Source of the DNA: Selaginella moellendorffii
Lineage: Eukaryota > Plantae > Lycopodiophyta
NCBI RefSeq assembly: GCF_000143415.4
Contig: NW_003314308.1
Span: 310,001 to 374,000, forward strand
Length of the DNA stretch: 64,000 bases
Direction of reading: 5' to 3'
Under the pieces are notes generated by a model, which was not told where the DNA came from, ran no database searches, and worked only from the letters and a program-made list of their open reading frames with translations. Below, piece after piece: positions 2,054 through 28,500 of the stretch. Numbering within the stretch: position 1 is the first letter of the stretch; every line of letters begins with the position of its first letter. The position numbers and the translations under genes were made by a program.

Positions 2054-4229
2054 ACTCCACCACCCATAGACGAAGTTCAATGTCCTCATCAAACAATAAA
2101 CTATTTTATAAAGTAATACCAACATGTATTACCCTTTCCATTCTTGGCACCTTACCAATATTCGTCAATGGTTTAATACCGAAGGCTCACCATGCCTTGC
2201 CCATCCTCTAAGGAGTATAGTCTCTCCAACTTAGAGATTGATTGGACCACTTGTGGTGGTTTACCGTGCCTTGCCCTCCACTCCTGAGCTCTATTACCAC
2301 TCGATAGAGCTTCTTCAGTGCCGGCAGCTCCACAACTTTGCCCATATTTTAAACCATCACCGCACTCTAGTGAGTTGGGACTCAAACCCAAGCACTAAAG
2401 GGTTGGGACTTGAACCTAAGCTTTGTATATGCATCTACAGAAGGCATCATCCAAAATGCCTGGTGTGACTCCCCACGCCGGTGCACCAACTTATAGTTAA
2501 AGCGCATTACAAATCACAACTTAGGAATCTAGTTCTTTTGCACTGCCAAGTCCTCTCACTTGACAAGCTGTGATCATGCATGGACTCCTTCATGCTTAGC
2601 CCCACGGGCCACCCCTTTGAAGTTGGCTCCTTCAACTAGGGTATTTGTTCCCCCGACTTGCCAATCTCACTTAACAAGTCATTCGACCACCGTAACATGG
2701 TTCATGCATAAGCATGAAAGTCCTTAACTATCGACTTTCGTTCAAAGCCCTCTCTTTGAACACTCGGGAACTACTTCCCTAACCTTGATAGCCTCGCCTC
2801 TTGGCAAGCTTCAAGACCACGCTTTTGCTGTGCCACTCTGATTTCGCACGCTCTATGAACCATTTGCACTTAGTTTTCTAGGTACTAAGTTACCTAGAAT
2901 TGTATTTGGGAACCTTTGAAGGAACTATATCCCTTAACTTGCTAAGGCCTTTCCTTTCGCAAGCTTTTAAATTGCTATATGGTCTAATATGGACAATTCC
3001 ATACTTTAGACTCTCCATGGCATCACGGTTGCTAGTAACAACATGCTTGAGCACCCACTTGATTCTCCATTCCTAACTGGTATAACCACCCTTGGTTATG
3101 CAATTCAATGCTTATGGTTTGATTCTATCCCTTTACTACTTGCCTTTGGCCTCACACCTTTCCTTCAATTATTCTCCTCCAGATTTAGGAGGATAGCTTT
3201 GCACTTTCTACTATGCTGTAGCAAGTATTTTTAGGGATGAACCTACCCGATAGCCTAGGGAGTGGTTCCTTAATCCGAGTATGCTCAACTTATAATCCCA
3301 CATATCTTATGGGCTTTTATATGCCTATCACTAGCCTTGCTAAAATTCCATTTTGGCTTTGTCCAATTCGGGTAGATAGTTTTCTTTTGTCTCCACAACC
3401 TTGGATGTCTGGATAACACCTTCTATCCATCATTCGCTAAGGACTTAATTCCTTGGGCCTTATCTATTGCCTTCGCGACCCTAAACACCACCTCCTGGTG
3501 TCCTAGAGTGTTTAGGTGTCCTAATGATGGCCTCCTTGACAATGAGCATTTTCTTTTATGACATTGACTCATTATATTGCAACATAAGCAATTTTTCCCT
3601 TGTAAGGGTATATTTAACTTCTTTATGCCATTAAGAAATCTTGGGTAACTACCTTCTACCCATTTAATCAATTATCTTGCACTTTTTGTTTAGTTGCCTC
3701 ATAGTTGTCAAATCTTACAACTCATTGTTTGGTGCTTCCACACCTCCATCATTATCTGGGTCACCACACTCCAACCACATGCCTTCTAACTTAAGCCATG
3801 CCATTCCCATTTCCATTAGGACTCCTTTAGGAAGGGGTTCTCATGAACCTACTAACTTGACCTCAAGGCATCGTGCTTTGGTACATTCGGTGTCTCCACA
3901 CCATTGGCTTTACAAGCCTACCCTTATGACACTACCCACTCATGTCCGGGTCTTTGCCAAAACCAAAATAGTTGTTTCTCATGCCAACTATCAGTTAGCA
4001 TGGCACCATCATATTCACACACAACTCTATGCCAAAGTTGTTTTCTTCTAGGAACACCTTTTCCATAACTTTAGTATGGCACATTTTGCCATCGATGAGA
4101 TACCTACTGTTCTCATACTTGGATCTTATAATCCTCCCCATCCTTAACAGGTTGTGGCTTGCCCGTTAACTTGATCCAGCCGTTGGCAACCATCGGATCG
4201 AGTCATGTTCTCTGCGAGAATTTTACTAT

Positions 4230-6801
4230 TGTCAACCACATTCTCCAGAATGTGGCTGACAGCTACCAGGTTCTGGAGATTGTGGCTGACAGCTACTAGG
4301 TTCTGGAGAATGTGGCTGCTGTCATCCAGGTTCTAGAGAACTTGGCTGCCAATAACCACATTCTCCAATTAAACGAGATGCAATTGCTTTTTTATTTTTT
4401 CATCAAAGCAAGCTTGAACACTTTGGCTATGACCATTGACTACAATCACATAATTACTCACAGTACAATGGTGAAATGTGGTGGTGCTCGTCGGTAGTGC
4501 TAAAGCTTTTGTAGCTCTTGGATCTTTTGCAAGAGCTAAAAGTAGCTCATTGTCGTCAAGATCTACCAAAAGTTAGAAATAAAGAATTCAAATCAAATAA
4601 ACTTTACCTTTGTCTCTAGAAATGACTGATTCCTGCTACTCGCCATGCTCTGGCATAGGCTCTAGCACAGTCTCGTGCACAGTCTCGTGTTGCTTGTCGT
4701 GTCCACTTGAAACAAAGAGAAAACTAAATTGAAAGAAAAAAGGAAAGAAAGAATTTTCTTACCTTGCTGCTCTTCAATCACATCCAAAACTTGGTGGTGA
4801 TTCAGTTCCTGTTTGTGGATCTCTTCTCTTGGAGAAGGTTGTTGCTGCCTAGGACCACCTAAAATTGAGAAAAGAGAAAAGTCCATTATAAAGATTATAA
4901 AGTTTTTGGTTTTCTTACCAAAATTTTGTTGTTGCTGCTCATGAATTTGAGTCTGTTGATTGTCATTTCCACCTGAATTGAAGAGTGTTAAACCTCCACA
5001 AAGCTTTGAATTACCAAAAGAAACAAGATGGCAATCTTGAAGATCCAATGGATCTTCATTTAAAGGTTTACCAGCCTCATAGCACCGTACAATATACTCC
5101 GATGCTTTTCTAAATTCGTCCTGGTAGTTTTTCAAACGACCAGTACGATCATACCAGTTATATAGAACATATGACATTGCCATTCTCCTTGCTTTCCTGG
5201 AGTGATCGTACCTGTTAAAAAAAGAGGCATTAATGATAAAATGGTTAGCAAAAACCTAATTGTTCCATGTTTTCCACCCTTTTGTGTCCCGTCAGCTTCA
5301 TACAATCTTCCATTGGAGTGTTGCAAATACTCATAGTTGTAATTACTGAGTGTTGAATATCTTTCACTGAAAGGCTCAAACCTAGAGAAAATGAATTATG
5401 AGAAAACAAGAAAGCAGTTAGTTAACTACCTGTTTTTGTGGCAACCAATTTTACTACTTCAGAGATCTTATGCTCTCCTATCCGTGCCCCTCGACGGTAC
5501 CAATTATTAGTCCTGTTGAAACAGTTGTTACAAGCCAGGAAAAACGGCTGCTTGTTCAAGTCCTCCCCATCACCAACTGCTGGATGCTTATCAAAAAAAA
5601 GCTTGAATGCCTTGTAGACTAAGGGAGCAGCTATTTCATAGAGATCCACAGCAGGCTGCCGATCCATGCTCTTACAATTCATTAGATCCACTTGGTAGTT
5701 TTTGGAAACCACGTTGGTTGAATCTGAGGCAAAAAAAATTCTGATTAGAACCGACAAGAACAAAGAAAACAAATAAGAAACTACTCAACTGGATATAGCA
5801 ACCAACAACATCCTCCAAAAGTGTAAAATCAGTGAATCGCACATGTACAAGAAAGAAATTCATGCAGAATAGTACAACTAACCAAAAACAGTCCATTAGG
5901 ACTGTTAGGTAGGAACTCTGGCAACGTGAGAACTACCTTAAGCTCAACCATCGACAAGTACACATGCTTTGACCTTGTACTTGTTGGCCTTGTAGTTTCT
6001 AGTGCTGCTTTTTGAATTATATGGCTAGTAGCATTCCTAGAATAAACAAACCAAACCAAACATATTAGAACACAAACCACAACAAAAAGAACAAAAAAAG
6101 CAAGATACCTTGCTGTAAGAAACCTTGGATCATTCAGGATGTCAACTTCTTCTTCTAAAACTCCTGTTCTTGCAACTCGGGCTTCTCTTGCCAGCTTCAA
6201 TACTCAGTTAAAGCAAAAAAACATATCCCTCAGAGTTGCTGGAGGGTAAGGCTTCCCATCGTCTCTCAAAACATGCTTGTAGAACAATGCAAGCTGGTGG
6301 GAGACCTCCTACAATCAGAGAAAGATTTAGTCATAAAAATCAAAAGAAAAAATAAGAAACAACCTTTGCAGGAAGTTCCTCAATCAGTCTCAAATCCTGT
6401 AAGGAAAACTCTGGGCCCTATGCCTTGCGCCATGCATAAAACTTTGATGTTGCCCACTCATTCTTCTTTCGGGTCCCTGCTGGTATAACCAATTCCAATG
6501 GGTTCTCGTCCTCCTCATTCGGAACAATTTGTCGAAAATGTTGGCAGCCAACCTGCATCAACAAACAATTTCAACCTGGAGCATCTAACCAAAAAGCACT
6601 TACCTCTCTCCGACCATGCCGACCACGCCCACTACGCCCACCGTGATTCCTCCAAGGACAAACCTATCAAACTCAAACGATTGCAAGTGAGTAAGCAAGA
6701 ATACATAATAACTAGAGAACTGAATTCAAGAAAGGAGCTGCGTTCTCAACAAGATCAGCAGCATTCTGGGACAATCCCAGATCAAATGAAGGAGGATCCA
6801 T
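4230..6801 (-). pseudogene. Multi-exon tyrosine recombinase of Crypton/DUF3504 (ZMYM/KCTD1/QRICH1-related) type
   Basis: Spliced translation gives MDPPSFDLGLSQ (6801), IPAGTRKKNEWATSKFYAWR (~6430-6487), LFYKHVLRDDGKPYPPATLRDMFFCFN*VLK (~6195-6287), NSPNGL, VSKNYQ (~5700), FKLFFDKHP...PFFLAC...NWY...IGEHKISEVVK, KDIQHSVITTM...MKLTGHKRVENMEQ|Y (Tyr 5210-5208). Disabled by CAG>TAG and CGA>TGA stops, a frameshift near 5890 and a probable GT>AT donor change. The 3' end is approximate. Confidence 0.75.
4238..4368. repeat. 30-bp tandem repeat (~3.5 units) near the left end of the Crypton-like insert
   Basis: Unit ~TGTGGCTGACAGCTACCAGGTTCTGGAGAA; reads as SPEPGSCQPH-like decapeptides on the minus strand. 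Confidence 0.8.
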
Positions 6802-7760
6802 CTACAGATAGACAAAATCGAGAGGATTGAGAAGGAAAAACTATGAAATCCAGAGAAAACCAGGAAATGAGGGCAAACCGGGATTATCAACTCTCAAGCT
6901 GCTCTCGATGCACACAAGCTCCTATTGCCTTGAGTGCCACAAGAAACCACTGCAAAATTCCTGAAACACACGGACAAGGAGCAGATCTGGATCAATCTAG
7001 CTACTATGCCTCAGATCTGACCTTGGCAAGCTGGTGCCGCCCTGCCGCTGCTGCTGACGCCTTGTTGCTACTGCTGCTGCTGACGCCTTGTTGCTACTGC
7101 TTCCGCCTTGCCACTACTGCTATTGCTTCCAAGAGAATCTGACAGCCTCACAGCGTCGGCACAAAAAACCCTAAAACCCTAGAAAACATGTTATATATGA
7201 CTTTTAGCCACGTGTTCTATGTTCATTTGACCACTCCCATCCTCGAATAACGTTATTCCATGTGTCCGTTAACGGTCTCGCCACAGCCCATTAAGGCCGT
7301 TCCTGGGCACGGGCTCGCACGTTCCCTCCAGAACGCACTCGCCGGGCTAACGCCTGGCTCGCCCGTTCTGGGCGGGAACATGCTCGCCCTACCTGGGAAC
7401 TCCTTCTTCAAGGGGTACAACACACCTCAGTCCAAATGCTTTTACGAATCCCTTAAGACCATTCCTTGACTCTACCCAAGTTATCCAGCATTTCAAGACT
7501 TCGATAATCCAATGACCCGTAAATTCCTATCTTGAGGTGCTAGCTCGTTGGAAATACAACTTCGTGTATTCATGTCCTACTCATAAGGACCACCACCTCG
7601 CTTACAAGTTCACACATGAACTGTAGTGGAGAGTCATGTCTTCCCGACTTGCTACTCCTCAAGGACAGACCCACTCCTAGGACCTTCCGATGCCAAAACC
7701 AGTGGTGATATACTTAAGCACCAATAAAAGTTAGACTAAGGAATAGCTCCGATACCAAAT

Positions 7761-9337
7761 TGTAAGCGATTAAATTTTTCATTCTACTTTAGTCACTTAA
7801 CCACACCTCCGACCACTTGGAAGAGTTTCACTCACAACCTCCATAAGTCCTATTTTGGACTTAGGGACTTATTAGCCCCAAGAATGGCATCCATGCCACT
7901 CAACCATTGCACTTGGTCCAAGTGCTCCACATGTCCGATCCCATGACCAACACCCCAAGGTACCACCAACATATCAGCCCGTTATGCTAAGGCCATCCCC
8001 ATTCGCCTTAGTCACACCGGTGGTCTAACACCACCTACATCATAGTCCCGTCTCTCAAAGACTGGGCCATCCATCCATGAGTGATCATCCTAGATCCACT
8101 CCTTAGCATCCTTAGGATGCCCGCAAACCTGGGGAATAGCCTTCCCCAATATCCTTTTTCCGGTCCTCACCAAGTCCCTTTCTGCCCATGGCCGTGTTCG
8201 CCAACACTGCCACTGGATCGAGGCCCACAGGCTCGACCACTAAGTCCCACAGTCCTTTGGGACTTCCTCACCACATGACTATATCCTTGGTCACTACACT
8301 AGAGGGCTACTCCTCTTCCTTTCCACAGTCTGGGACTTTGGGACAACATTTCGGAACACCGTGGCCCTATGCGGGCCTCATGGGTACTCTCCCTGCCTTT
8401 TGCCTTTGGGTGCTCTAGCCACAGGCTTAAAGTGAGGTTTTGTTAAGCCACGCCAGGTATCCAAGTAGGTAGTGCCACCCACATTTGGACTGGGAGCATC
8501 AACCATTCGATTTCCCGGGGGAACTAGAGCCGGCTCTTGAACACTTCACCAAGTTACCCCGTTTGTTGGTCCGTATTCACTTTAGTCTTGGACTTCCCAG
8601 TGGTCAGCTCATCACCCAACACTGGGTATGGCCTTCCTGGGCCAAACTGGCCTTTCCTGGCCAAATTGGCTTCATTGGGCTCCAACCCCCACACTCTCCC
8701 TACTATACTGTTAGAACCCCCCGCAGCCCCCCCGCCCCCCCCGGGGGACGATCACTTTGGGCTTTCACCCAACAGCCTATATTAGTATTCGGACTCAGAC
8801 TCGGACTTGAACTTGGACTCGGACTCGGTCTCGGTTCCGGTTTCAGACTCGGACTCGGTCTCAGTCTTGGTCTCAGTCTCGGTCTCGGTTCCATCTCGGA
8901 CTCCATCTCGGGTCCATCTCGAACTCCATCTCGGACTCCATCTCGGGTCCATCTCAGACTCCATTTCGAACTCTATCTCGGGTTCAGGTCCATCTCGGAC
9001 TCCATCTCGGGTCCATCTCGAGTCCATCTCGGACTCCATCTCGGGTCTATCTCAGACTCCATCTCGAGTCCATCTCGGGTCCATCTCAGACTCCATCTCG
9101 GACTCCATCTTGGACTCCATCTTGAGTCCATCTCGAATCCCTTTTCTAGAGACTCACTTATCACTCACTTTGTGCTTGTTCCTCGAGCACTTTGTTGGGA
9201 GTTCCACTCCCATTCTCGACCTTTCAAGTAGGAGCTTTTGGTCCAAATGTGTAACGCTCGTTTGGCTTTCACTTCAGCCACTACCACGTGGCACCCTTCC
9301 GGCTCCACTTTGGGGCCTAGGGATTTTGTGTCTCACA
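7761..9337 (-). repeat. 5' LTR of B1 (1577 bp) with internal 6/12-bp repeat array (~8790-9140)
   Basis: Abuts the PBS; array of GGACTC/GGTCTC and GGACTCCATCTC/GGGTCCATCTC units. Confidence 0.9.
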
Positions 9338-9449: not shown

Positions 9450-12400
9450 TATAAGTGACTAATTTTTCCATTCTACTTTAGTCACTTAACCATACCTCCG
9501 ACCACTTGGAGGAGTCTCATTCACAACCTCCATAAGTCCAATTCAGGACTTGGGGCTTGCTTGCCCCGAAAATGGCATCCATGCCACTCAACCTTTGCAT
9601 TTGGTCCAAGTGCTCCACGTGTCCGATCCCATAATTGACACCCCAAGGTACCACCAACATGTCAGCCCGTTACGCTAGGCCATGCCCATTCACCTTGGTC
9701 ACATCGGTGGTCCAACACCACATGCATTGCAATCCCGTCTTTCCAAGATGGGGCCATCCGTCCATGAGTGGTCATCTCATATCCACTCCTTAGCATCCTT
9801 AGAATGCCTGCAGACATGGGGAATAGCCTTCCCCAATATCTTCTTTCTGGTCTTCACCAAGTCCTTTTTTGTCCATGGCCGTGCTCACCAACACGGCCAT
9901 TAGATCAAGGCCCACAGGCCCAACCACTAAGTCCCATGGTCCTCTAGGACTTCCTCACTATGTGACTAGGTCTTTGGTCACCACACCAAAGGGCTACTCC
10001 TCTTCCTTTCCACAGTTTGGGACTTTGGGACAACATTTCGGAACACCGTGGCCCTACGCAGGCCTCATGGGTACTCTCCCCACCTTCCGCCTTTGGGTGC
10101 TCTAGCCATGGGCTTAGAGCGAGGTTCCATTGAGTCACGCCAGATATCCAAGTAGGTAGTGCCACCCACACTTGGACTGGGAGCATCAACCATTCGATCT
10201 CCCGGGGGAACTAAAGCCGGCTCTTGAACACTTCACCAAGCTACCCCGCTTGTCGGTCCGTATTCACTCTAGTTTTGAACTTCCTAGTGGTTATCCCATC
10301 ACCCAACACCTGGGTACAGCCTTCCTGGGACAAACTGGCCTTTCCTAGCCAAACTGGCTCCACTGGAGTCCTCCCCCTTACTATACTTTTGAAGCTCACC
10401 AAACCCCCCAGGGTCTGGGAGACAAATGCTTTGGGCTTTCACCCTCTCAGACTCAAACTCGGACTTGGACTCGGACTCAGACTCGGACTCAGACTTGAAC
10501 TCGGACTCAAACTCAGGCTTGGTCTCAGCCTTGGCCTCGATCTCGGTCTCAATCCCGATCTCGGTCTCAATCTCGGTCTCGGTCTCAGTCTCGGTCCCGG
10601 TCTCAGTCTCGACCTCGGACTCCATCTCGGGTCCTTCTCGGACTCCATCTCAGATTCCATTTCGGGTCCATCTCGGACTCCATCTCGGACTCTGTCTCGG
10701 TCCATCTCGGACTCCATCTCAGACTCCATCTTGGGTCCATCTCGGACTCCAACTTGGGTCCATCTCGAGTCCATCTTGGACTCCATCTCAGACTCCATCT
10801 CGGGTCCATCTCAGACTCCAACTCGGGTCCATCTCGGGTCCATCTCGGACTCCATCTTGATTCCATCTCGGACTCTAACTCAGGTCCATCTCAGGTCCAT
10901 CTCAGACTCCATCTCAGACTCCATCTCGGGTCCATCTTGGACTCCAACTCGGGCCCATCTCGGGTCCATCTCGGACTCCATCTCGGACTCATCCACGTGT
11001 CACATGGTGGTCCTTTTTGGGTCCCTTTTTGGAGCCTCGCTTATTGCTTGCTTCGTACTCATTCCTCGAGCCCTTCGTTGGGAATTCCACTCCCACTCTC
11101 GACCTTTTAAGTTGGAGCTTTTGGTCCAAACGTGTTACACTCGTTTGGCTTTTGCTTCGGCCGCTACCACGTGGCACCCTTCCGGCTCCACTTTGGGGCC
11201 TAGGGATTTTGTGTCTCACAACTCCACCACCTATAGACAAGGTTCGATGTCCTCATTGAACAGTAAACCCTTTTATAAAGTAACACCCACATGTATTATC
11301 GTTTCCATCCTTGGCACCCGGCCAATATTTGTCTATGGTTTGACACCGAAGGCTCACCATGCCTTGTCCATCCTTTAAGGAGCATAGTCTCTCCAACATA
11401 GAGACTTATTCGACCACCTGAGGTGGTTTGCTCCCTTTTATTGGTTCAGTTTTCGCTAAACCCGTTAGAGACACCTTCTCTAACTCAATCCCACTACTCA
11501 TTTTCGAGTAGTCTCAAATTCCATCGACATAACCTTTGCACTTTGAAACTTTTACTTTTGACTTCTTGAAGTCAATTTCTTAGGTGTCTTCGACACTTTG
11601 CATTACACATCTTGTGCAACTCCACTTCCCCATCCTAAGAAGTTCTTTACTTGAGGGCACCATCATCCTCTCTTCTATTTCATGCCTACTTGGGCACTAA
11701 GTTTTAGTTATCAAAATTTGTGTTAAGGCTGTCCATGGCCCTATCATTTGGTTACCTTACCGCTCCCTCCCTTGGAACTTCCACTTTCGCCAAATCGGAG
11801 CAATTGAGAATCCATCTTTGGAAACACCTTGCCTTTCCCACAATTTGTTAGCCCCTAACACATTAGTGTTCTTGGCCTAACTTTGCCTTTTGGATTCTTT
11901 CCCATGGTTCCCATGGCTTTTTTCTTAGCCATTAGTTTTTTGCTTCTATCCTTGATTGTTGCATCGGATCACTACTTCCATTCTCGAGGTATCCTTTCAA
12001 TTCCATAGCAAAGACTTTGTTTTGCCAAGTCCAGAGGGTGTTTACCCCTAGTATGTCTCTTTATCATTTTCTACTATGGCTTTATTCATAACCCAATTTA
12101 GTGACCCTCTCATAAGTCTTTTATAGAGATTACTTTCCTCGGATTCACTATGCCATCGCATAGGCATTGGTTATTTCCCTTAGGTGTTCTTCCCACTTGG
12201 TCATCTTGACCAAGCCACACCATCATAAACAGTTCAAATCAACACTTTGAACCAGGAACTTCATTCCTTAGCCAACCAAGGACCTTATCATTATTTAGCC
12301 ACAAGATCACCTAGTGATCTCACTTTGGCACCTTAACAGAGTTGTCAAGAGGTACTTTGTCTTTTAGATCTTCAAGTTGTTGACCATGACCCCGGGGGCA

Positions 12401-15400
12401 TCCCCACACTTGGCAGTGCACCCATGCCAGCCCTTACGGCCAAGGGTCCATAGCAACTGAGATTAGGTGTCCCTATCTCACTCACCACGTCCTTGGTGCC
12501 ACTTGCACCAAATGTTCAAGTTAGATATGTCGAGCTTTCACACTAAGCAATTTAACTGTGCATCACCACTCCAAGGCATCCCTCGCTTGGTGGTGTGCCC
12601 AAACCAGTCTCTTCACTGAGAGTCCATGACCACCGAAAAATGAGTGTCCTCATATTCCAAACCATCACCATGCCCTAGTGATTTGGGACTCGAACCCAAG
12701 CACTAGAAGGTCGGGACTCCAACCCAACCTTCGTATATGCATCTACGGATGGCATCGCCTAGGATGCCTGGCATGACTCCCCACGCCGGTGCACCAACTT
12801 ATACTTAAAGAGCGTTATAGATCACAACTTAGGAACCTAGTTCCTCCGCACTGCCAAGCCCTTTCACTTGACATGTCTGTGATCATGCATGGACTCCTCC
12901 ATGCTTGGCCCCATGGCCACCCTTTTTGAAGGCAGCACCTTCAAGTAGGGTATTTATTCCCCTGACTTGTTAATCTCATCTAGCAAGTCATCTGGCCACC
13001 GTAACATGGTTCATGCATAAGCGTGAAAGTCCTTAACCATCGATTTTCATCAAAGCCCTCTCTTTGAACACTCGGGAACTACTTCCCCAACCTTGATGCC
13101 CTCGCCTCATGGCAAGCTTCAAAACCACGCTTCTGCTGCGCCACTCCAATTTCGCGCGCTCTAAGAACCTTTTACACTTGCCTTTCTAGGTACTTATCTA
13201 CCTAGAATTGTCTTCAGGAACCTTCAAGGAACTTTGTTCCTTAGCTTGCTAAGGCTTATCTTTTTTTGCAAGCTCCCTAATCACCATATGGTTTAATTTG
13301 GATAATTCCACATTTTAAACTCTCCATGGCATCGCGTTCGTTAATAACAACCCGCTCGAGCACCCACTTGATTCTCCACTCCCAACTCGTATAACCACCC
13401 TTGGTTATGCCCTTTGATTTCTATGGTTCGGTTCCATCCCTTTACTACTTTGCTTTTTGGCCTCATATATTTCCTTCAGTTATTCTCCTCTAGACTAGGA
13501 GGATAGCTTGGCACTTTCTACTATTCCTTAGCAAGTATTCATAAGGATGAACGTACCTGATAGCTTAGGGAGTAGTTCCTCAATCCAGGTATGCTCACCT
13601 TGTAATCCCATACACCAGGATTACATTGCTACTCATGGGCCTTTATATGCCCATCATTAGCCTTGCCAAAATCCCTTTTTGGCTTTGTCAAATTCGGGTA
13701 GAGAGATTTTTCCCGTCTCTGCAATCTTAGACATTTGGATAGCACCTTCTATCTATCATTTGCTAGGGACTTTGTCCCTTGGGCCTTATTCATTGCCCTC
13801 ATGACACAAACACCATCTCTTGGTGTTCTAGAGTGCTTAGGTGTCCTAATGATGACCTTTTTGACAATGAGCATTCCTTTTACGACATTGATTTACTATA
13901 TCGTAACATAAGCAATTTATCCCCCATAAGGGTATATCCAACTTCTTTATCCCAATAAAAATCTTAGGTAGTTATCTTCTACCAAATTAACCAATTATTT
14001 TGCACCTTTTGCTTAGTTACCTCATAGTTGTCAAGTCCTACAACACATTGCTAGTGCTTCCACACTTCCATCATTATTTGGGTCACCACACTCTAATCAC
14101 CTGCCTTCTAGCTTAGGCTAAATGTGGCAAGGCGTGTTTCTTTGAGGTTAAGTTGGCGAGTTTATGAAAAACCCTTCCAAATGAATCTAATGGAAATGGG
14201 AATGGCATAGGTGTTTCCACACCATCGGCTCCACAAACCTACCTCTATGACACTTCTTACTTGTGTCTAGGTTTTTGCCAAGACGAATATAATGGTCTCT
14301 TATGCCAACTATCCATTAGCATTACACTATAAGATTTATGCACAACTTTGTGTCAAAGTTGTTTTCTTCGAGAAACTCTTTCCCACGATTTTAGCATGGC
14401 ATATTCTGCCATCAATGAGATACCCATTATTCTCATGCTTGGATCTTAATATCCTCCCCATTCCTCGTGGGGTACAACACACTTTAGTCCAAATACTTCC
14501 ATCAATCCCTTAGGATTATTCCTCGACTCTACTTGAGTCATCCCGCTTTTTGGACTTTGCTAATCAAACGACCGTGTGGTCCTACTTTTGAGGTGCTAGC
14601 TCACTGAAATACAACTTCATGTATTCATGTCCTACTCACAAGGACCGTCTTTGCAAGTGTTACTCTAACACTTGATTTTGTTATCTGGGGCCAACTTTTG
14701 CCCCTTATGACTACTTGTTTATGTGATGAGAATATCAACTCATCCTCTAAGTGCACCCCCAACTCCTTGGGTTGTTCCTGCATTTATTAAAGATAGCCCC
14801 GCTACCATTTCAAGGACTTGTGTCCTCTTCCGTATTTGACATCTCGTGGTCATTACTTCTAGTCTCACATTCATGAGCACCAACCTCAACTATATGAGGA
14901 TAATCTTGTCACTCCTTTATTGCTTTGGAGTCTTTATCTTTCCCGTGATCCTAACTGTAGTTGTTTACCACAACTACATTAGCTGGTTTTCTAAGTCAAA
15001 CGCTCATCTAGATCCCATCCTCAACTCTCTGAGGAAACCTTTATACTGTTCCCAAGATCCCATAGTCGTTCCATTATTGCCCCTTTTATGTCCACTACAT
15101 CACCCCAAGTTCACATATGAACTTGAGTGGAGAGCTATGTCCTCTCGACATGCTACTCCTCAAGGATAGGCCCACTCCTAAGACCTTCTGATGCCAACAT
15201 CAATAGTGATATACTTGAGCACCAATAAAAGTCGAACTAAGGAACAGCTCCGATACCAAGTTGTAAGCAACTAATTTTTCTATTCTACTTTAGTCACTTA
15301 ACCATACCTCCGACCACTTGGAGGAGTCTCATTCACAACCTCCATAAGTCCAATTTAGGACTTGGGGCTTGCTTGCCCCGAAAATGGCATCCATGCCACT

Positions 15401-16920
15401 CAACCTTTGCACTTGGTCCAAGTGCTCCACGTGTCCGATCCCATGATCGACACCCCAAGGTACCACCAACATGTCAGCCTGTTATGTTAGGCCATGCCCA
15501 TTCACATTGGTCACATCGGTGGTCCAACACCACATGCATTGCAATCCCGTCTTTCCAAGATGGGGCCATCCGTCCATGTGTGGTCATCTCATATTCACTC
15601 CTTAGCATCCTTAGAATGCCCGCAGACATGGGGAATAGCCTTCCCCAATATCTTCTTTCTGGTCCTCACCAAGTCCTTTTCTGTCCATGGCCGTGCTCAC
15701 CAACACGGCCATTGGATCAAGGCCCACAGGCTTGACCACTAAGTCCCATGGTCCTCTAGGACTTCCTCACCGTGTGACTGGGTCCTTGTTCACCACACCA
15801 GAGGGCTACTCCTCTTCCTTTCCACAGTCTGGGACTTTGGGACAACATTTCGGAACACCGTGGCCTTACGCGGGCCTCATAGGTACTCTCCCCGCCTTCC
15901 GCCTTTGGGTGCTCTAGCCACGGGCTTAGAGCGAGGTTTCATTGAGCCACGCCAGGTATCCAAGTAGGTAGTGCCACCCACACTTGGACTGGGAGCATCG
16001 GCCATTCAATCTCCCGGGGGAACTAAAGCCGGCTCTTGAACACTTCACCAAGTTACCCCGCTTGTTAGTCTGTATTCACTCTAGTTTTGAACTTCCTAGT
16101 GGTTATCCCATCACCCAACACCTGGGTACAGCCTTCTTGGGACAAACTGGCCTTTCCTGGCCAAACTGGCTCGAGTCCTCCCCCTTACTATACTTTTGGA
16201 GCTCACCAACCCCCCAAGGTCTGGGAGACGAACGCTTTGGGCTTTCACCCTCTCAGACTCAAACTCGGACTTGGACTCGGACTCAGACTCGGACTCAGAC
16301 TCAGACTCAGACTTGGACTCGAGCTCGGTCTCGGCCTCAGCCTCGGTCTCGGTCTCAATCCCGATCTCGGTCTCGGTCTCGGTCTCGGTCCCGGTCTCGG
16401 TCTTGACCTCGGACTCCATCTTGGGTCCTTCTCGAACTCCATCTCGGATTCCATCTCAGTCCATCTCGGACTCCATCTCGAACTCCATCTCGGTCCATCT
16501 CGGACTCCATCTCAAACTCCATCTCGGACTCCATCTTGGGTCCATCTCGGACTCCAACTCAAGTCCATCTCGGGTCCATCTCGGACTCCATCTCGGGTCC
16601 ATCTCGGGTCCATCTCGAACTCCATCTCGGACTCCATCTTGATTCCATCTTGAACTCCATCTCGAGTCCATCTTGGGTCCATCTCGGACTCATCCACATG
16701 TCACGTGGTGGTCTTTTTGGGTCCCTTTTTGGAGCCTCGCTTATTGCTCGCTTCATACTCGTTCCTCGAGCCCTTCATTGGGAGTTCCACTCCCACTCTC
16801 GACCTTTCAAGTCGGAGCTTTTGGTCCAAATGTGTTACACTCGTTTGGCTTTCGCTTCGGCCACTACCACGTGGCACCCTTCCGGCTCCACTTTGGGGCC
16901 TAGGGATTTTGTGTCTCACA
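9450..16920 (-). mobile_element. LTR element B2 (non-autonomous, ~4.0-kb internal region without intact ORFs)
   Basis: LTRs at 9450-11220 and 15262-16920; minus-strand PBS at ~15247-15258; purine tract next to 11221. Perfect TSD CCCTC (9445-9449 / 16921-16925). Confidence 0.92.
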
Positions 16921-16925
16921 CCCTC

Positions 16926-18330
16926 CCACATGTTTTTGATGAGCTTGTTGTTCTGGCATCTGTGGATTTTTTAGACAAGGATTCTGTGCTGTCGGCAGTT
17001 GTTGTACTCGACGTTCAGTGTCTGTAAGGTGCAGAGCAGGATCTACCTTCTCTTGATGAGGTTCACGAAGCTCAAAAACTTGAGCCATGGATACGAAGGC
17101 TTTGAGATGGGTTTGAGAATTCTACATCCCTTGCTGATGACTTGCCATTTTGGCATTTACATTCTCAGTATCGCTTTGAAGATGGCCTTATTTATTTTGT
17201 GGGGACAGATCCTAATGATCATTTACGGATGGTGGTGCCTTCTGTCTTTATTCTGAGGTTTTTCCATTCCTACCACAATTCTCCTATTCTAGGTGGGCAT
17301 ATAGGACATCATCGTGTATCATAGAAGCTACGTAGGTCTTTTTATTGGCCAGAGATACGACATGATATTATCAAGTATGTGGATAGTTGTGTTTGGTGCC
17401 AAGGTCGTAATACTCCCTCTCGTGCTGCAGAAGGACAGTTGGAGTCAATTGTAATTTCCCGTCCGTTTGAGTTGGTGGCATTTGATCTTATGAGACTTTT
17501 TCCACGGTTGATTGCTAGCAATGAGTATGTTATTATTGCTTCTAACTACTTGACTCGTTGGGTGGAAATTGGTGTTCTTGCTAGCGCCTCTACAACTGCT
17601 ATTGGATACTTCCTCCTCAATCGACTGGTGTTCCAGCATTCTTGTCCAGAGCGGATTCTTTCAGATAATAGTCCCGCATTTATGGTTGAGGCATTTCATG
17701 TTTTGACGTCTCAGTTGGGGATACACCACACTTTCACGAGTGCTTATCATCCACAATTAGACAGTCTAGTGGAATGGCTTGTTCGGACATTCAAACGAAT
17801 GATTGCAAAGTATGTGAACTTTCAACATTCAGATTGGGATGGTTATTTGCCGTCTCTTCGGTATGCATATGTCACATGGGTGCAGAGTTCTGTTGATGCT
17901 TCACCATATAAATTCCTATATAGTCATGATCTAATATTACCAACGGACATGGGTTTACCTTCGCAATTGCCACGAGCTGCTGATACTAAGTTATAGGATC
18001 AGTATTTGACAAGAATTCTTCCACTTGTCCGAGCAAAATTTGCCAAACACTTAGGCGACGTACAAGTGGGACAATAATGGCGTTACAACTCCCATCATTG
18101 TCCACTTGCAAAATACAAAGTGGATGAGTTGGTGTTAGTCCATTTTCCCCATCTTACAGTACGTGGGTTATCTAAGGGGCTCCTTGCGCAGTGGAAAGGA
18201 CCGTATCAGGTGTTGCGGCAAGTTGGACCACAAGTTTATGAAGTTCGGCATGACATCTAGCAAGTTGATCCTCCAGAGATTGTGCATGTGCAGCAGTTGA
18301 AACACTTCATACAAAGGGATCATAAACAAT
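16926..18330 (+). pseudogene. pol: Ty3/gypsy integrase region of host element A
   Basis: HHCC zinc finger HSYHNSPILGGHIG...YWPEIRHDIIKYVDSCVWCQ; core RPFELVAFD...ILSDNSPAF...AYHPQLDSLVE; GPY/F motif WKGPYQV (~18190-18212); several in-frame stops. Confidence 0.92.
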
Positions 18331-21127: not shown

Positions 21128-21350
21128 TGACCTTCGTCAGCTTCCTGTGCTCTTGTGCAGCCATGGGGCTATAGAGATGTTCGCGTCGATGCAAGGGGAT
21201 CACGGCGTGGATCCAATCGCGGAGCACTACGGCTGCGTGGTGCGGTGTGGGCATCTGCTGAGGCGCTCGTGATTGCCATGGAGCCCAGTGTCGAGCAGTG
21301 AACGAGCTTGCTCAATGCGTGCACACTCCACTTGGATCCAGCGCAAGTCA
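21128..21350 (+). pseudogene. PLS-class PPR C-terminal fragment (copy 1)
   Basis: VTFVSFL...MFASMQGDHGVDPIAEHYGCVV...AEALVIAMEPSVEQ*TSLLNACTLH, with frameshifts. Confidence 0.7.
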
Positions 21351-22920: not shown

Positions 22921-22960
22921 CAAGTGCGCTTGCCTCTCCAAAAGCATCCTCTGTTTCGCT

Positions 22961-25503: not shown

Positions 25504-28500
25504 TGTGAGACACAAAATCCCTAAGCCCCAAAGTGGAGCTGGAACGGTGCCATGTGGTGGTGGCCAAAGTCAAAACCAAACGAGCGTAACACATTTGGAC
25601 TAAAAGCTCCAACTTGAAAAGGTCGAAAGTGGGAGTGGAACTCCCAACGAAGTGCTCAAGGAATGAGCACAAAGCGAGCAATAAACAAGGCTCCAAAAAG
25701 GGACCCAAAAGGACCAACATATGATACGTGGAAGTGTCCAAGATAGACCCGAGATGGACCCGAGTTGGAGTCCAAAGTGGAGTCTGAAGTGGAGTCCGAG
25801 AAGGACCCAAGATGGATCCGAGATTGAGTCCGAGACGGACCCGAGATGGAGTCCGAGATGGACCCGAGATGGAGTCCGAGATGGACCCGAGATGGAGTCC
25901 GAGATGGAGTCTGAGATGGAGTTCGAGATGGACCCGAGATGGAGTCCGAGATGGAGTCCGAGATGGACTCGAGATCTAGTCCGAGATGGACCTGAGATGG
26001 AGTCCGAGATGGACCCAAGATGGAGTCCGAGATGGAGTCCGAGATGGACCCGAGATGGAGTCCGAAGTCGAGACCGAGACCGGGACCAAGACCAGGACTG
26101 AGACCGGGACCGAGACCGAGACCAAGATCGGGACCGAGCCCGAGCCCGAGTCCGAGTCCGAGTCCGAGTCCAAGTCCGAGTCCGAGTCCGAGTCTGAGTT
26201 CGAGTCTGAGAGGGTGAAAGCCCAAAGCGTTCGTCTCCCAAACCCTGGGGGGTTTGGTGAGCTCCAAAAGTATAGTTGGGGGTTGGAGCCCAGTGGAGCC
26301 AGTTGGGCCAGGAAAGGCCAGTTTGGCCCAGGAAAGGCCAGTTTGGCCCAGGAAGGCCAGACCCAGTGTTGGGTGATGAGCTGACCACTGGGAAGTCCAA
26401 GACTAGAGTGAACACGGACCGACAAGCGGGGTAACTTGGTGAAGTGTTCAAGAGCCGGCTCTAGTTCCCCCGAGAGATCAATTGGCCGATGCTCCCAATC
26501 CAAGTGTGGGTGGCACTACCTACTTGGATACCAGGCATGGCTCAACGGAACCTCGCTCTAAGCCCATGGCTAGAGCACCCAGAGGCGGAAGGCGGGGAGA
26601 GTACCCAGGTGGCTCGCGTAAGGCCATGGTGTTCCGAAATGTTGTCCCAAAGGCCCAAACTGTGGAAAGGAAGAGGAGTAGTCCTCTGGGGTACTGACCA
26701 AGGACACAGTCGTGTGGTGAGGAAGTCCCAGAGGACCGTGGGACTTAGTGGTTAGGCATGTGGGCCTCGATCCAGTGGCAGTTTTGGCAAACACGGCCAA
26801 GGGCAGAAAGGGACTTAGTGGGGACTGACAGAGGGATATTGGGGAAGGCTATTCCCCTTGTCGGTGGGCATCCTAAGGATGCTAAGGAGTGGATCTGAGA
26901 TGACCACTCATGGATGGTTTGCCTAGTCTTGGAGAGCCAAAACTGTGATGCAAGTGGTATTGGACTACCAGTGTGGCAAAGGTGATTGGGTATGGCCTTA
27001 GCGTAACAGGCTGCCATGTCGGTGGTACCTTTGAGTGTCAGTCATGGGATCGGACACGTGGAGCACTTGGACCAAGTGCAAATGTTGAGTGGCATGGATG
27101 CCATTCTTGGGGCTAGCAAGTCCCAAGTCCTGAATTGGACTTATGGAGGTTGTGAATGAGACTCCTCCAAGTGGTCGGTGGTGTGGCTAAGTGATTAAAG
27201 TAGAATGGAAAAATTAGTCGCTTACAACTTGGTATCGGAGCTGTTCCTTAGTCCGACTTTTATTGGTGCTCAAGTATATCACCACTGGTGTTTGCATCGG
27301 AAGGTCCGAAGAGTGGGCCTATCCTTGAGGAGTAGCAGGTCGAGAAGACATGGCTCTCCATTATAGTTCATGTGTGAACTCGTAGGTGAGGTGGTGGATA
27401 GAAAAGGGCCAATAATAGAACGACTTTGGGATCTTGGGAACAATATAAGGGTTTCCTCAGAGAGCTAAGGATGTGATCCAGATGAGTGTTTGACGCAGCA
27501 AATGAGCTAATGTAGTTGTGGTAAACAACTATAGTTGGGATCACGGGAAAGATGCAGACTCCAAAACAATAAAGGAGTCACAAGATTACCTTAATATGGT
27601 TGAGGCTGGTACTCATAAATTTGAGACCGGAATTGTTGACCGTGGGAGGTCAAATACGGAAGAGGACACAAGTCCTTGAAATGGTAGCCAGGGCTAGCTC
27701 TAATAAATGCTGGAACAACCCAAGGAGTTGGGGGTGTACTCAGAGGATGAGTTGGTATTCTCATCATATGGACAAGTGGTCCTAAGGGGCAAAAGGTTGC
27801 CCCAAGAGAACAAATCAAGTGTCGGAGTAACACTTGCAAAGATGGTCCTTGTGAGCAGGACTTGAATACAAGAAGTTGTATTCTAACGAGTTGGCACCTT
27901 GAAGACTAAGACCTCGTAGGTCGTTAGATTAGCAAAGTCTAAAATGCTGGATGACTTAAGTGGAGTCAGGGAATGGCCCTAAGGGATTGGTTGAAACATT
28001 TGGATTGAGGTGTATGGTGCCCCATGAGGTATGGGGAGGATCATAAGATCCAAGGATGAGAATAATAGGTATCTCATTGATGGCAGAATGTGCCATGCTA
28101 AAGTCGTGGGAAAGATGTTCCCAAAAGAAAGCAACTTTGGCCCAGAGTTGGGTGCAAACACTATGGTGCAATGCTAATGGATAATTAGCATAAGAGACAA
28201 CCATATTAGTCTTGGCAAAAAGACCTAGACACAAGTAAAAAGTGTCATAAAGGTAAGCTCGTGGAACCGATGGTGTGGAAACACCGAAGGTGCCAAGGCG
28301 TGCTGCCTTGAGGTTAAGTTGGCGGGTTCATGAGAACCCCGTCCAAAGGAATCCCAATGGAAATGGGAATGGCATAGCCTAAGCTAGAAGGCATGCGGTT
28401 AAAGTGTGGTGACTCAGATAATGATGGAGGTGTGGAAGCACCAGCAATAAGTTGTAGGACTTGACAACTATGAGGAAACTAAACAAAACGTGCAAAATAA

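What the first reader, a model, noticed from the sequence alone, without database searches (positions are those of the whole stretch)
4142..7408. Crypton-like tyrosine-recombinase transposon in a land plant, with empty sites in sibling LTR elements
Seen: a 3.26-kb segment interrupts B1 exactly where B2 (CCCCA|TTCCTCGTGGGGTAC, ~14460) and B3 (~28030) are continuous, so it arrived as a discrete insertion. The ORF track splits its gene into fragments, but splicing short introns on the minus strand gives a collinear set of motifs: IPAGTRKKNEWATSKFYAW, F....RDDGKPYPPATL, SPNGL, SKN, F....HP...PFFL...WY...IG, KDI(R>Q)HS, TGH-x8-Y. Known: this order matches Crypton/DUF3504 tyrosine recombinases (R-K-HxxR-H-Y), and Cryptons have introns but no TIRs or true TSDs. 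I know them from fungi, animals, stramenopiles and algae, and do not recall a land-plant family. Inference: a once-mobile plant Crypton lineage. Host-style introns, TATA and telo-boxes point to long residence, and the lesions are mostly C>T/G>A changes, so intact copies may exist elsewhere.
Basis: partly seen in the sequence, partly recalled or inferred. Interest (0 to 1): 0.88.

Follow-up and report, generated by a model that had tools for sequence, protein, structure and literature searches.

The report
Dead Crypton transposon copy in Selaginella
A 3.3-kb jumping gene that moves with a tyrosine recombinase (a Crypton) has landed inside a retrotransposon of the spikemoss Selaginella moellendorffii. 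This copy is dead, but a better-preserved sister copy is transcribed and spliced, and the land-plant literature I could search lists no element of this kind.

Summary
Window 4143-7405 (gene on the minus strand) is a discrete 3,263-bp insertion in one copy of an LTR retrotransposon. Three paralogous empty sites show a precise insertion with no target-site duplication: two in the window and one on S. moellendorffii scaffold GL377669.

The insert holds one gene of 12 coding exons.
- Sister copies keep a tyrosine-recombinase signature: VRGRKEL, SKN, KDIRHS and GH-x8-Y.
- Exons 7-8 match Pfam PF00589 at E 5e-6.
- DUF3504 is the only Pfam hit for exon 5 and among the nearest Atlas clusters for exons 5 and 6.

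There is no reverse transcriptase. The same 3' end abuts five different flanks, and GL377575 carries a head-to-tail tetramer. I read it as a Crypton-type DNA transposon of a lycophyte.

The window copy is dead, mostly through C>T/G>A changes. It has two frameshifts, a 21-nt loss of the first catalytic box, R>Q in the second, three stop codons and two broken splice sites.

New here: RNA contigs from three studies carry a spliced, polyadenylated transcript of about 2 kb from a less decayed copy, confirming ten coding-region introns.

The scan had already met this family on other DNA (tetramer, s1-385019). I found no paper listing Cryptons in land plants. Repbase and Dfam could not be checked.

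The parts
4143..7405 (-). One unit of the element (3,263 bp), from AAGGAGTTCC... to ...GTTAAG in gene sense
   Evidence: Flank alignment with three empty sites. The same ends occur in L001 and L002.
7406..7408 (-). AAG of the target next to the 5' end. It is identical to the last three bases of the element (4143-4145), so the crossover lies somewhere within this trinucleotide.
   Evidence: Junction sequences. The junction between tandem units reads GTTAAG|AAGGAG.
4143..4170 (-). 3'-terminal palindromic site. Sister copies have 9-bp arms TTAACGGGC / GCCCGTTAA around an 8-bp spacer. In the window copy it is degraded by G>A and C>T changes. It is a candidate recombinase-binding site (inferred).
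   Evidence: pair I5.
7268..7295 (-). Second copy of the 28-nt site, inverted, lying 111-138 nt inside the 5' end
   Evidence: the repeat finder on L001 copy 3: 28 nt, 82% complementary (I5).
7277..7387 (-). Cluster of five GCGAG motifs in the 5' subterminal region. The element has six in all.
7153..7190 (-). TATA box (about 7182-7187) and two TTAGGGTTT-type (telo-box-like) motifs upstream of the transcript start
   Evidence: Sequence. RNA contigs reach at least about 7115-7140 and not beyond about 7200.
7022..7150 (-). 5' UTR exon. The start is approximate.
   Evidence: RNA contig pieces and loose ends at 6803 and 7115
6802..7021 (-). 5' UTR intron (GT..AG), removed in the RNA contigs
   Evidence: In X10, the sequence after 6803 continues with the sequence of about 7022-7050.
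6604..6801 (-). Exon 1 (6721-6801, with ATG at 6801), predicted intron 1 (6664-6720) and exon 2 (6604-6663, Arg/Gly-rich). The three long RNA contigs are collinear with the genome here, so intron 1 is not confirmed.
6364..6552 (-). Exon 3, with the N-terminal motif IPAGTRKKNEWATSKFYAW. There is a window-specific stop TAG at 6418-6420.
   Evidence: Introns 6553-6603 and 6309-6363 are removed in RNA.
6109..6308 (-). Exon 4 (RDDGKPYPPATL). There is a window-specific stop TGA at 6204-6206.
5790..6036 (-). Exon 5, which carries the first catalytic Arg box. The window has an extra T near 5885 and lacks 21 nt at 5840/5841 that encode GRKELYD. The codon before the gap reads His, where three sister copies read Arg.
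   Evidence: The RNA contigs carry the 21 nt and lack the extra T (table 4).
5430..5723 (-). Exon 6 (SKNYQ lysine box). The window has an extra G at 5709/5710 that shifts the frame.
   Evidence: The RNA joint 5709->5790 with 13 letters between shows one G fewer.
5261..5381 (-). Exon 7, reading KDIQHS where sister copies have KDIRHS (R>Q at 5353-5355), then TGHKRVENMEQ. The donor GT is mutated to AT at 5260.
5015..5211 (-). Exon 8. It begins with the catalytic Tyr (YDHS). It is longer than in the NCBI model.
   Evidence: RNA joints 5211->5261 and 4970->5013
4369..4972 (-). Exons 9-12: 4919-4972, 4763-4858, 4608-4706 and 4369-4562, with stop TAA at 4369-4371. This is a Gln/Glu-rich tail and C-terminal region. 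The acceptor CAG is mutated to CAA at 4707, and there is a window-specific stop TAG at 4636-4638.
   Evidence: The joints are in table 5; table 3 shows that an RNA contig (X13) and DNA contigs read CAG at 4638.
4376..4376 (-). Poly(A) addition site of the transcript of the sister copy
   Evidence: A run of 25 T on the + strand precedes 4376 in the X10 contig (table 7).
4230..4367 (-). Four tandem 30-nt units, each built around a short palindrome (CCACATTCT..AGAATGTGG), between the poly(A) site and the 3' end
   Evidence: D1, I1-I5. The array is also present in L001 (I1-I3, I6, I8).
14456..14475 (+). Empty site in paralogous element B2. The insertion point corresponds to 14462/14463.
28017..28039 (-). 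Empty site in paralogous element B3. The insertion point corresponds to 28029/28030.

Best explanation
**What it is.** Window 4143-7405 is a solitary, mutationally dead copy of a 3.27-kb Crypton-type DNA transposon of Selaginella moellendorffii. The element is one intron-rich gene for a tyrosine recombinase of about 610 aa, framed by short non-coding ends. Those ends carry a 28-nt palindromic site at the 3' tip, an inverted second copy 111 nt inside the 5' end, GCGAG repeats and a 30-nt palindromic repeat array.

**Shown.**
- The insertion is precise and makes no target-site duplication.
- One AAG is shared by the element end and the target.
- Five different 3' flanks abut the same 3' end.
- A head-to-tail tetramer exists, with the junction GTTAAG|AAGGAG.
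- Sister copies keep the recombinase signature.
- Copies decay by C>T/G>A changes.
- A less decayed copy is transcribed, spliced and polyadenylated.

**Inferred, by analogy with Cryptons and prokaryotic tyrosine-recombinase elements.**
- The recombinase excises the element as a double-stranded circle.
- The circle is rejoined at GTTAAG|AAGGAG.
- The circle recombines with a target that shares a few bases with the junction.
- Recombination into a resident copy gives tandem arrays.
For: **Discrete insertion.**
- Three empty sites and no duplication.
- A DNA run holds contigs that bridge 4142->7406.

**One gene, no reverse transcriptase.** Translation and Pfam scans find nothing else in the unit.

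**Recombinase signature.**
- PF00589 matches exons 7-8 at E 5e-6 and 26.8 bits. P0001, which covers several copies, scores 42.6 bits against a cut-off of 27.1.
- Exon 5 hits only DUF3504 (E 0.073).
- Nearest Atlas clusters: exon 5, DUF3504 at 0.97 with 185-192 shared features, behind an unnamed cluster at 0.98; exon 6, 0.95; exons 7-8, 0.94 to eukaryotic Tyr-recombinase fragments.
- The R, K, R, H and Y boxes are present in sister copies.

**Multiple copies with the same ends.**
- The L001 tetramer and the truncated L002 copy are 93-98% identical to each other and to the window copy.
- Two further 3' flanks start exactly at 4143 and 4146.

**Decay and expression.**
- The substitution spectrum is dominated by C>T/G>A.
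- RNA contigs of 1.8-2.05 kb from three studies show ten coding-region introns and the 5' UTR intron removed at GT..AG sites, with a poly(A) tail. Their depth on the highly repeated LTR flanks is zero.

**Literature.** Cryptons have short terminal direct repeats as recombination substrates, no TSDs and no long terminal repeats (PMC3212892).
Against: - Every one of the six genomic copies examined is broken, so no intact recombinase gene has been seen.
- The first His of the HxxR box is Lys (KDIRH).
- Homology beyond PF00589 rests on a sub-threshold DUF3504 hit and on embedding neighbours.
- An exhaustive phmmer search with exon 6 found no relative outside Selaginella.
- Both AlphaFold models were too poor to test the fold.
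- The shared AAG rests on one complete solitary insertion. The left flank of the L001 array has ACG at that position.
- The three long RNA contigs retain predicted intron 1, which carries stop codons. Those transcripts as assembled would not encode the full protein from the ATG at 6801.
- A circular intermediate has not been observed.
Confidence: 0.85

Rival explanations
1. The expressed locus is a domesticated host gene derived from a Crypton. The window copy and the other copies are old relics of a family that no longer moves. The transcript serves a host function rather than transposition.
For: - The promoter looks like a plant host promoter (TATA, telo-box-like motifs), and the gene has 12 coding exons and a 5' UTR intron.
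- Transcripts appear in three studies.
- All sampled genomic copies are dead.
- Earlier notes of this scan report a separate domesticated DUF3504 fusion gene in the same genome (not tested here).
Against: - The transcript is about 96% identical to a copy that is clearly an insertion, and it shares that copy's untranslated ends.
- An RNA contig runs from the element's 3' end (4143) into a fifth, different flank, as expected for one more transposon copy.
- Sister copies keep the catalytic boxes, whereas domesticated DUF3504 genes usually lose them (PMC3212892, PMC13465315).
- This reading does not dispute that the window feature is a transposon copy.
Confidence: 0.08
2. The 3.27-kb unit is cargo of another mobile system, such as a Helitron-like or other non-autonomous carrier, or a host gene duplicated by segmental or tandem duplication. 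The recombinase gene would play no part in its spread.
For: - There is no TSD.
- A palindrome sits at the 3' terminus.
- Tandem arrays also occur with rolling-circle elements.
Against: - Neither strand has a 5' TC or a 3' CTRR.
- Insertion is not between A and T: the flanks are G|G in the window and G|A in L001.
- No Rep/helicase was found anywhere in the unit or its flanks.
- The unit boundaries coincide with the gene plus a few hundred bases.
- The same boundaries in unrelated contexts exclude segmental duplication.
Confidence: 0.04
3. It is a remnant of a DIRS/Ngaro/PAT-type tyrosine-recombinase retrotransposon that has lost its reverse transcriptase.
For: These retroelements also encode tyrosine recombinases and lack TSDs. 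DIRS are known from green algae (PMC9033089).
Against: - All full-length copies are 3.27 kb with the same content and no RT/RNase H/methyltransferase remnant.
- Eleven spliceosomal introns in the coding region are kept in the genomic copies, which retrotransposition would remove.
- There are no split direct repeats or an internal complementary region.
- The nearest families are DUF3504-type rather than DIRS-type. PMC3212892 reports that DIRS and Ngaro recombinases do not match DUF3504.
Confidence: 0.02

Closest known systems
CryptonA elements of animals, and the DUF3504-encoding 'Glomhopper' CryptonA elements of Glomeromycota (PMC3212892, PMC13465315)
   Same: - A single gene for a tyrosine recombinase of the DUF3504 type.
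- No reverse transcriptase and no TSD.
- No terminal repeats at both tips.
- Introns in the gene.
- Many truncated or decayed copies.
- DUF3504 clusters, including Mollusca and Mucoromycota ones, are among the nearest Atlas neighbours of exons 5 and 6.
   Different: - The host is a land plant (lycophyte).
- The gene has twelve coding exons with short plant-type introns.
- The HxxR box reads KxxR.
- The DUF3504 Pfam score is far below threshold (13.6 against 29.7 bits).
- There is a 28-nt palindromic site at the 3' tip with an inverted copy 111 nt inside the 5' end.
- A head-to-tail tetramer exists.
- No phylogeny was made, so clade membership is open.
CryptonF and CryptonS elements of fungi, oomycetes and diatoms (PMC3212892)
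   Same: - Short direct repeats at the termini, taken to be the recombination substrate.
- Presumed circular intermediate.
- Intron-containing recombinase gene.
   Different: - Those elements have 4-6-bp terminal repeats (for example TATGG). Here only AAG is certain.
- CryptonF carries a GCR1_C domain and some carry a C48 peptidase. Neither is found here.
DIRS1-like, Ngaro and PAT retrotransposons
   Same: Tyrosine recombinase as the integration enzyme, and no TSD.
   Different: They carry RT/RNase H and characteristic terminal or internal repeats, and they move through RNA. This element has none of these, and its genomic copies keep their introns.
Domesticated DUF3504 genes (KCTD1, KIAA1958, ZMYM2-4, QRICH1, WOC)
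   Same: They derive from the same kind of recombinase. QRICH1/DUF3504 clusters appear among the Atlas neighbours of exon 5.
   Different: Those are single-copy host genes that have lost catalytic residues. This is a multicopy insertion family whose better copies keep R, K, R, H and Y.

Membership tests
Crypton (DNA transposon encoding only a tyrosine recombinase) | Encodes a tyrosine recombinase with the catalytic residues R..K..HxxR..H/W..Y | tested here: met
   - PF00589 at E 5e-6 on exons 7-8, and 42.6 bits against a cut-off of 27.1 on P0001.
- VRGRKEL, SKN, KDIRH, GH and Y are all present in sister copies.
- The first His of HxxR is Lys.
- The window copy itself has lost the first Arg box and has Q for the second Arg.
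Crypton (DNA transposon encoding only a tyrosine recombinase) | No reverse transcriptase or other transposase in the element | tested here: met
   The 3.27-kb unit is filled by one gene running from about 7150 to 4376. Pfam scans of all pieces give nothing else. Introns are retained in the genomic copies.
Crypton (DNA transposon encoding only a tyrosine recombinase) | No target-site duplication; short direct repeat or microhomology at the two ends | tested here: met
   The rejoined flanks have the same length as three empty sites. AAG stands at both junctions. The tandem junction reads GTTAAG|AAGGAG. Only one complete solitary insertion was available.
Crypton (DNA transposon encoding only a tyrosine recombinase) | No terminal inverted repeats and no long direct terminal repeats | tested here: inconclusive
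   The two tips are unrelated. However, a 28-nt palindromic site at the 3' tip has an inverted copy 111-138 nt inside the 5' end, 82% complementary.
Crypton (DNA transposon encoding only a tyrosine recombinase) | Repeated in the genome with the same ends in different contexts | tested here: met
   Five different 3' flanks abut the same 3' end: the window, the L001 array, L002 and two flanks from RNA contigs. Two different 5' flanks (window and L001) abut the same 5' end.
Crypton (DNA transposon encoding only a tyrosine recombinase) | Moves through an excised circular double-stranded intermediate | not testable with these tools
   The head-to-tail tetramer is what integration of circles into a resident copy would give, but it is not proof.
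CryptonA / DUF3504 clade | Match to Pfam PF12012 (DUF3504) and grouping with CryptonA in a recombinase tree | tested here: inconclusive
   PF12012 is the only hit of exon 5, but at E 0.073 and 13.6 bits against a cut-off of 29.7. Atlas neighbours at 0.95-0.97 are DUF3504 clusters. No tree was built, because no Crypton sequences could be obtained.
Helitron | Rep/helicase gene or, for non-autonomous copies, 5' TC and 3' CTRR ends with insertion between A and T | tested here: not met
   The ends are AAGGAG...GTTAAG. The flanks are G|G and G|A. There is no Rep/helicase.
DIRS/Ngaro/PAT retrotransposons | Reverse transcriptase/RNase H beside the recombinase; split or inverted terminal repeats with an internal complementary region | tested here: not met
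   No RT/RH is present in any of the five full-length units. Spliceosomal introns are present in the genomic copies.

The most novel reading that the evidence does not exclude
Selaginella moellendorffii still carries an autonomous, active Crypton. The transcribed copy would encode an intact recombinase that excises circles and makes new insertions and tandem arrays. That would be the first active tyrosine-recombinase DNA transposon known in a land plant. It could also be the source lineage of the domesticated DUF3504 fusion gene that earlier notes of this scan report in vascular plants. A further possibility, suggested only by Mucoromycota neighbours in the Atlas, is an old exchange with arbuscular-mycorrhizal fungi, whose genomes are rich in DUF3504 Cryptons.
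Probability: 0.25. Interest if true: 0.8.

Novelty: new member of a known kind. Interest (0 to 1): 0.6.

Why it matters
Published surveys place Cryptons in fungi, animals, oomycetes and diatoms. A recent review of land-plant transposable elements lists no tyrosine-recombinase element at all. A multicopy Crypton in a lycophyte adds a whole transposon class to the land-plant repertoire, with these features:
- a clean empty-site proof of insertion;
- a tandem tetramer;
- plant-type introns;
- a transcribed sister copy.

It also gives a plausible source for Crypton-derived host genes in plants.

The sharply defined junction (GTTAAG|AAGGAG) and the palindromic sites beside it offer a concrete substrate for testing how eukaryotic Crypton recombinases choose and cut their sites, which has never been shown biochemically.

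The copy in this window is itself a dead relic.

Tried and rejected
- **Pfam on window ORF fragments.** Nothing useful came back: the pieces are too short and broken.
- **Word-indexed protein searches.** Exon 6, P0002 and P0001:1000-1401 returned no relative except the two S. moellendorffii models. No full-length protein is on record.
- **Exhaustive phmmer with exon 6.** It found only P0001 and P0002. The third hit, P0003, is a 5,620-aa acidic repeat protein and is spurious.
- **phmmer against PDB sequences.** No recombinase hit.
- **AlphaFold2.** P0001:1047-1265 and the stop-free read-through L002:9917-10819 gave mean pLDDT 37.8 and 40.2. I ran no fold search, because the matches would be meaningless.
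- **Spliced protein not submitted.** I did not hand a spliced protein to any tool, because that would have meant typing a long sequence. All searches used natural pieces by reference.
- **Helitron reading.** Rejected on the ends and target sites.
- **Capture by the host LTR element.** Rejected because introns are kept and the same unit lies in unrelated contexts.
- **Crossover inside the spacer of the terminal palindrome.** Rejected because LTR sequence resumes directly after GTTAAG.
- **Copy number from read depth.** Not attempted beyond a hint, because the runs are contigs.

Full report
**1. The observation**

I aligned the two sides of the interrupted repeat (B1) with its paralogues B2 and B3.
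- B1 runs up to ...CCTCCCCATC and resumes at CTTCAAGGGGTAC.
- B2 and B3 are continuous at that point.
- A third uninterrupted copy of the same repeat lies on a Selaginella moellendorffii scaffold, locus L002 at about 5722.
- Joining the B1 flanks gives a 17-nt stretch of exactly the length seen in the three empty sites. The insertion therefore neither duplicated nor deleted target bases.
- In gene sense the junctions read ...CCCCTTGAAG|AAGGAGTTCC... and ...CTGTTAAG|GATGGGG....
- Because AAG stands on both sides, the unit can be written 4143-7405 or 4146-7408 (3,263 bp).
- A DNA run holds contigs that bridge 4142->7406, which are further empty copies of the host repeat.

The host repeat is part of an LTR-retrotransposon landscape.
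- A gag ORF lies at 74-736 and an integrase fragment at 17379-17993.
- A pair of direct repeats at 943-2013 and 7761-8831, 91.5% identical, flanks the region.

**2. What the insert encodes**

The window ORF fragments alone gave no Pfam hit. An exhaustive phmmer search with the exon-6 piece found two proteins, both from S. moellendorffii assembly GCA_000143415.2.
- P0001 (1,401 aa) is a gene model that runs across several tandem copies.
- P0002 (312 aa) comes from a truncated copy.
- A third hit is a spurious acidic repeat protein.
- P0001 matches Pfam PF00589 (phage integrase / tyrosine recombinase) at 42.6 bits against a cut-off of 27.1.
- One copy's exons 7-8 alone give E 5e-6 and 26.8 bits over profile positions 103-170 of 172.
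- Exon 5 taken from L002 hits only DUF3504 (PF12012), at E 0.073.

The protein-language-model Atlas, queried with three non-overlapping parts, returns the same kind of neighbour each time.
- Exon 5: an unnamed cluster at 0.98, then DUF3504 clusters at 0.97 with 185-192 shared features.
- Exon 6: DUF3504 at 0.95.
- Exons 7-8: eukaryotic Tyr-recombinase fragments at 0.94.
- Lower ranks include DUF3435 and NDC10_II, which are other eukaryotic recombinase-derived families.

I aligned the window copy with five copies from L001 and L002. Together they show the full signature:
- LVRGRKELYDLRFTDF, the first Arg with Glu;
- SKNYQ, the Lys;
- KDIRHS, the second Arg, with Lys in place of the usual first His;
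- GHKRVENMEQ-Y, the His and then the Tyr at the start of exon 8.

Upstream lies an N-terminal region: IPAGTRKKNEWATSKFYAW and RDDGKPYPPATL. Nothing else is encoded. There is no reverse transcriptase, RNase H, Rep/helicase or DDE transposase.

**3. Gene structure and transcription**

I laid one DNA run and three probable RNA runs on 3900-7700. The RNA runs come from three studies and carry two organism labels.
- Each RNA run holds a contig of 1.8-2.05 kb that follows the minus-strand gene.
- Segments are removed at GT..AG borders: 6553-6603, 6309-6363, 6037-6108, 5724-5789, 5382-5429, 5212-5260, about 4973-5014, 4859-4918, about 4707-4762, and about 4563-4607.
- A 5' UTR intron at 6802-7021 is also removed.
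- In X10 the contig ends in 25 T on the + strand at 4376, which is a poly(A) tail.
- The DNA run shows none of these joints.
- The RNA runs have zero depth on the very highly repeated LTR flanks. These are therefore transcripts, not DNA.

The transcript does not come from the window copy.
- It carries the 21 nt that the window lacks at 5840/5841.
- It lacks the extra T near 5885.
- It has one G fewer at 5709/5710.
- In X13 it reads CAG where the window has the stop TAG at 4636-4638.
- In X9 it differs from the window at 28 A>G and 37 T>C positions, against 3 C>T and 6 G>A (+ strand).
- The window copy is thus a C>T/G>A-decayed relative of the expressed one.

One caveat concerns intron 1 (6664-6720). 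All three long contigs are collinear with the genome from 6604 to 6801, so this predicted intron is retained in them. It carries stop codons in every copy. I could not see the whole transcript sequence, so an intact frame is not shown.

**4. Lesions of the window copy**

- Stop codons at 6418-6420, 6204-6206 and 4636-4638.
- Frameshifts near 5885 and 5709/5710.
- A 21-nt deletion that removes GRKELYD.
- Arg>His just before that deletion.
- Arg>Gln in KDIRHS at 5353-5355.
- Donor GT>AT at 5260.
- Acceptor CAG>CAA at 4707.

The five other genomic copies are also broken, each in its own way, but every exon is intact in at least one copy. Substitutions private to each copy are dominated by C>T and G>A: 71 of 111 in the window and 31 of 39 in L001 copy 1. 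This is the pattern expected from deamination of methylated cytosines in silenced repeats (inference).

**5. Evidence for mobility, and the ends**

On scaffold GL377575 (L001) four units stand head to tail, each 3,266-3,270 bp.
- The first unit is split by a 5.5-kb LTR-type insertion.
- The units are 96-98% identical to each other and about 93% to the window copy.
- All three internal junctions read ...GCCCGTTAAG|AAGGAGTTCC....

The 3' end abuts five different sequences:
- GATGGGG in the window;
- ATACCAT at the L001 array;
- GTTAGGG at L002;
- ACATCGATCC in an RNA contig that starts exactly at 4143;
- a flank in a second RNA contig that starts at 4146.

The left flank of the array has ACG where the window has AAG, so the shared trinucleotide is not proven to be a rule.

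The ends carry recognisable structure.
- In the sister copies the last 28 nt form a palindromic site, with arms TTAACGGGC and GCCCGTTAA around an 8-bp spacer.
- A second copy of this site, inverted and 82% complementary, lies 111-138 nt inside the 5' end, at window 7268-7295.
- Five GCGAG motifs lie between the 5' tip and that second copy.
- Between the poly(A) site and the 3' tip lie four 30-nt units with internal palindromes.

In a circle, or at a tandem junction, the two 28-nt sites would face each other across about 110 bp that contain the crossover point. I take this to be the recombination region (inferred).

The crossover is not inside the spacer of the terminal palindrome, because host sequence resumes directly after GTTAAG.

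In the DNA run the two subterminal regions have several times the summed depth, and many more distinct contigs, than the coding interior. At 4189, for example, there are 21 contigs, against 1-4 inside the gene. This hints at non-autonomous derivatives but is not a copy count.

**6. Mechanism**

The best reading is Crypton-type transposition.
- The recombinase excises the unit as a circle joined at GTTAAG|AAGGAG.
- The circle recombines with a target that shares a few bases with the junction, giving an insertion without duplication.
- Recombination with a resident copy gives head-to-tail arrays.

The following are shown: the precise insertion, the lack of duplication, the shared AAG, the array, the catalytic boxes and the transcript. 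The circle and the catalysis are inferred from what is known of Cryptons (PMC3212892) and of prokaryotic tyrosine-recombinase elements.

**7. Comparison with what is known**

Kojima and Jurka (PMC3212892) describe Cryptons as follows:
- they lack TIRs, long direct repeats and TSDs;
- they have 4-6-bp terminal direct repeats as recombination substrates;
- they occur in fungi, animals, oomycetes and a diatom;
- CryptonA recombinases match DUF3504, while DIRS and Ngaro recombinases do not.

The 2026 Glomhopper paper (PMC13465315) adds DUF3504 Cryptons in Glomeromycota, many of them intron-containing and truncated. A 2022 review of land-plant transposable elements (PMC9033089) lists no Crypton and states that DIRS are known only from green algae.

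Full-text searches for Crypton together with Selaginella, Viridiplantae, Archaeplastida or land plants found no report of a plant Crypton. Searches pairing DUF3504 with plants, and tyrosine recombinase and transposon with Selaginella, also found none. Repbase and Dfam could not be consulted.

The element meets the structural definition of a Crypton. Its placement in the CryptonA/DUF3504 clade is likely but not demonstrated.

**8. Relation to earlier notes of this scan**

The same genome was already noted to hold the tetramer. A follow-up agent read it as a dead Crypton-type array in S. moellendorffii (s1-385019), and I reached the same array independently through the protein search. A 2,337-letter note (s1-380490) probably corresponds to the truncated L002 copy.

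Other notes describe a domesticated DUF3504 domain fused to a PAXX/XLF-like head (s1-337363, s1-419967). I did not test these. They bear only on the wider picture.

This window adds three things:
- a solitary insertion with empty-site proof;
- the definition of the crossover and of the terminal sites;
- the RNA evidence.

**9. Verdict**

The observation and the interpretation hold. The feature is a dead copy of a real Crypton-type transposon family of a lycophyte that appears to be unpublished, and a sister copy is transcribed. It is a new member of a known kind. It is moderately to highly interesting for transposon biology, and less so for this particular copy.

Noticed in passing
L001:4287-9846: A 5.5-kb insertion with TG...CA ends and a 5-bp duplication (AGATT) splits the first unit of the tandem array at the start of exon 6. 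It looks like an LTR retrotransposon or a solo LTR that arrived after the array formed.
   Followed up: partly
window 6604-6801: All three long RNA contigs are collinear with the genome here, so predicted intron 1 (6664-6720, with stop codons in every copy) is retained. As assembled, the transcript would end the ATG-6801 frame after 29 codons. This is unexplained: it could be intron retention, an assembly path choice, or a different start.
   Followed up: partly
window 4143-4300 and 7202-7328: In the DNA run the two subterminal regions have roughly 4-13 times the summed depth, and far more distinct contigs, than the coding interior. A DNA contig joins 4369 to 6741, and an X13 (probable RNA run) contig leaves 4205 for sequence like the 5' terminus. 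These may be internally deleted, non-autonomous derivatives.
   Followed up: no
L002:9917-10819: Introns 4 and 5 are in frame and free of stops in this copy. Exons 4-6 therefore read through as one 301-aa ORF with two hydrophobic inserts. RNA contigs show that both are nevertheless spliced out.
   Followed up: yes
L001:10001-20957 (protein P0001): The public gene model SELMODRAFT (1,401 aa) is a chimera stitched across four tandem transposon copies. P0002 (SELMODRAFT_428622) skips the exon part that carries the first catalytic Arg.
   Followed up: yes
window 21128-23772 and 34304-36953: This is a pair of 2.65-kb direct repeats, 97% identical and about 13 kb apart. They look like the LTRs of a younger retrotransposon that encloses B3 and other repeats.
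   Followed up: no
window 9452-11220 and 15264-16920: These are 1.7-kb direct repeats, 88% identical, flanking the B2 segment. The B family appears to be the internal part plus LTRs of a non-autonomous LTR element with no recognisable Pfam domain in its long ORFs.
   Followed up: partly
window 4142/7406 target, compared with the element junction: The rejoined target CCCCTT-GAAGGAT-GGGG resembles the element's own junction CCCGTTAA-GAAGGAG-TTCCCGGG, with C-rich and G-rich inverted arms around a near-identical 7-mer. The observed crossover is 3 nt out of that register, and the L001 target shows no such similarity.
   Followed up: partly
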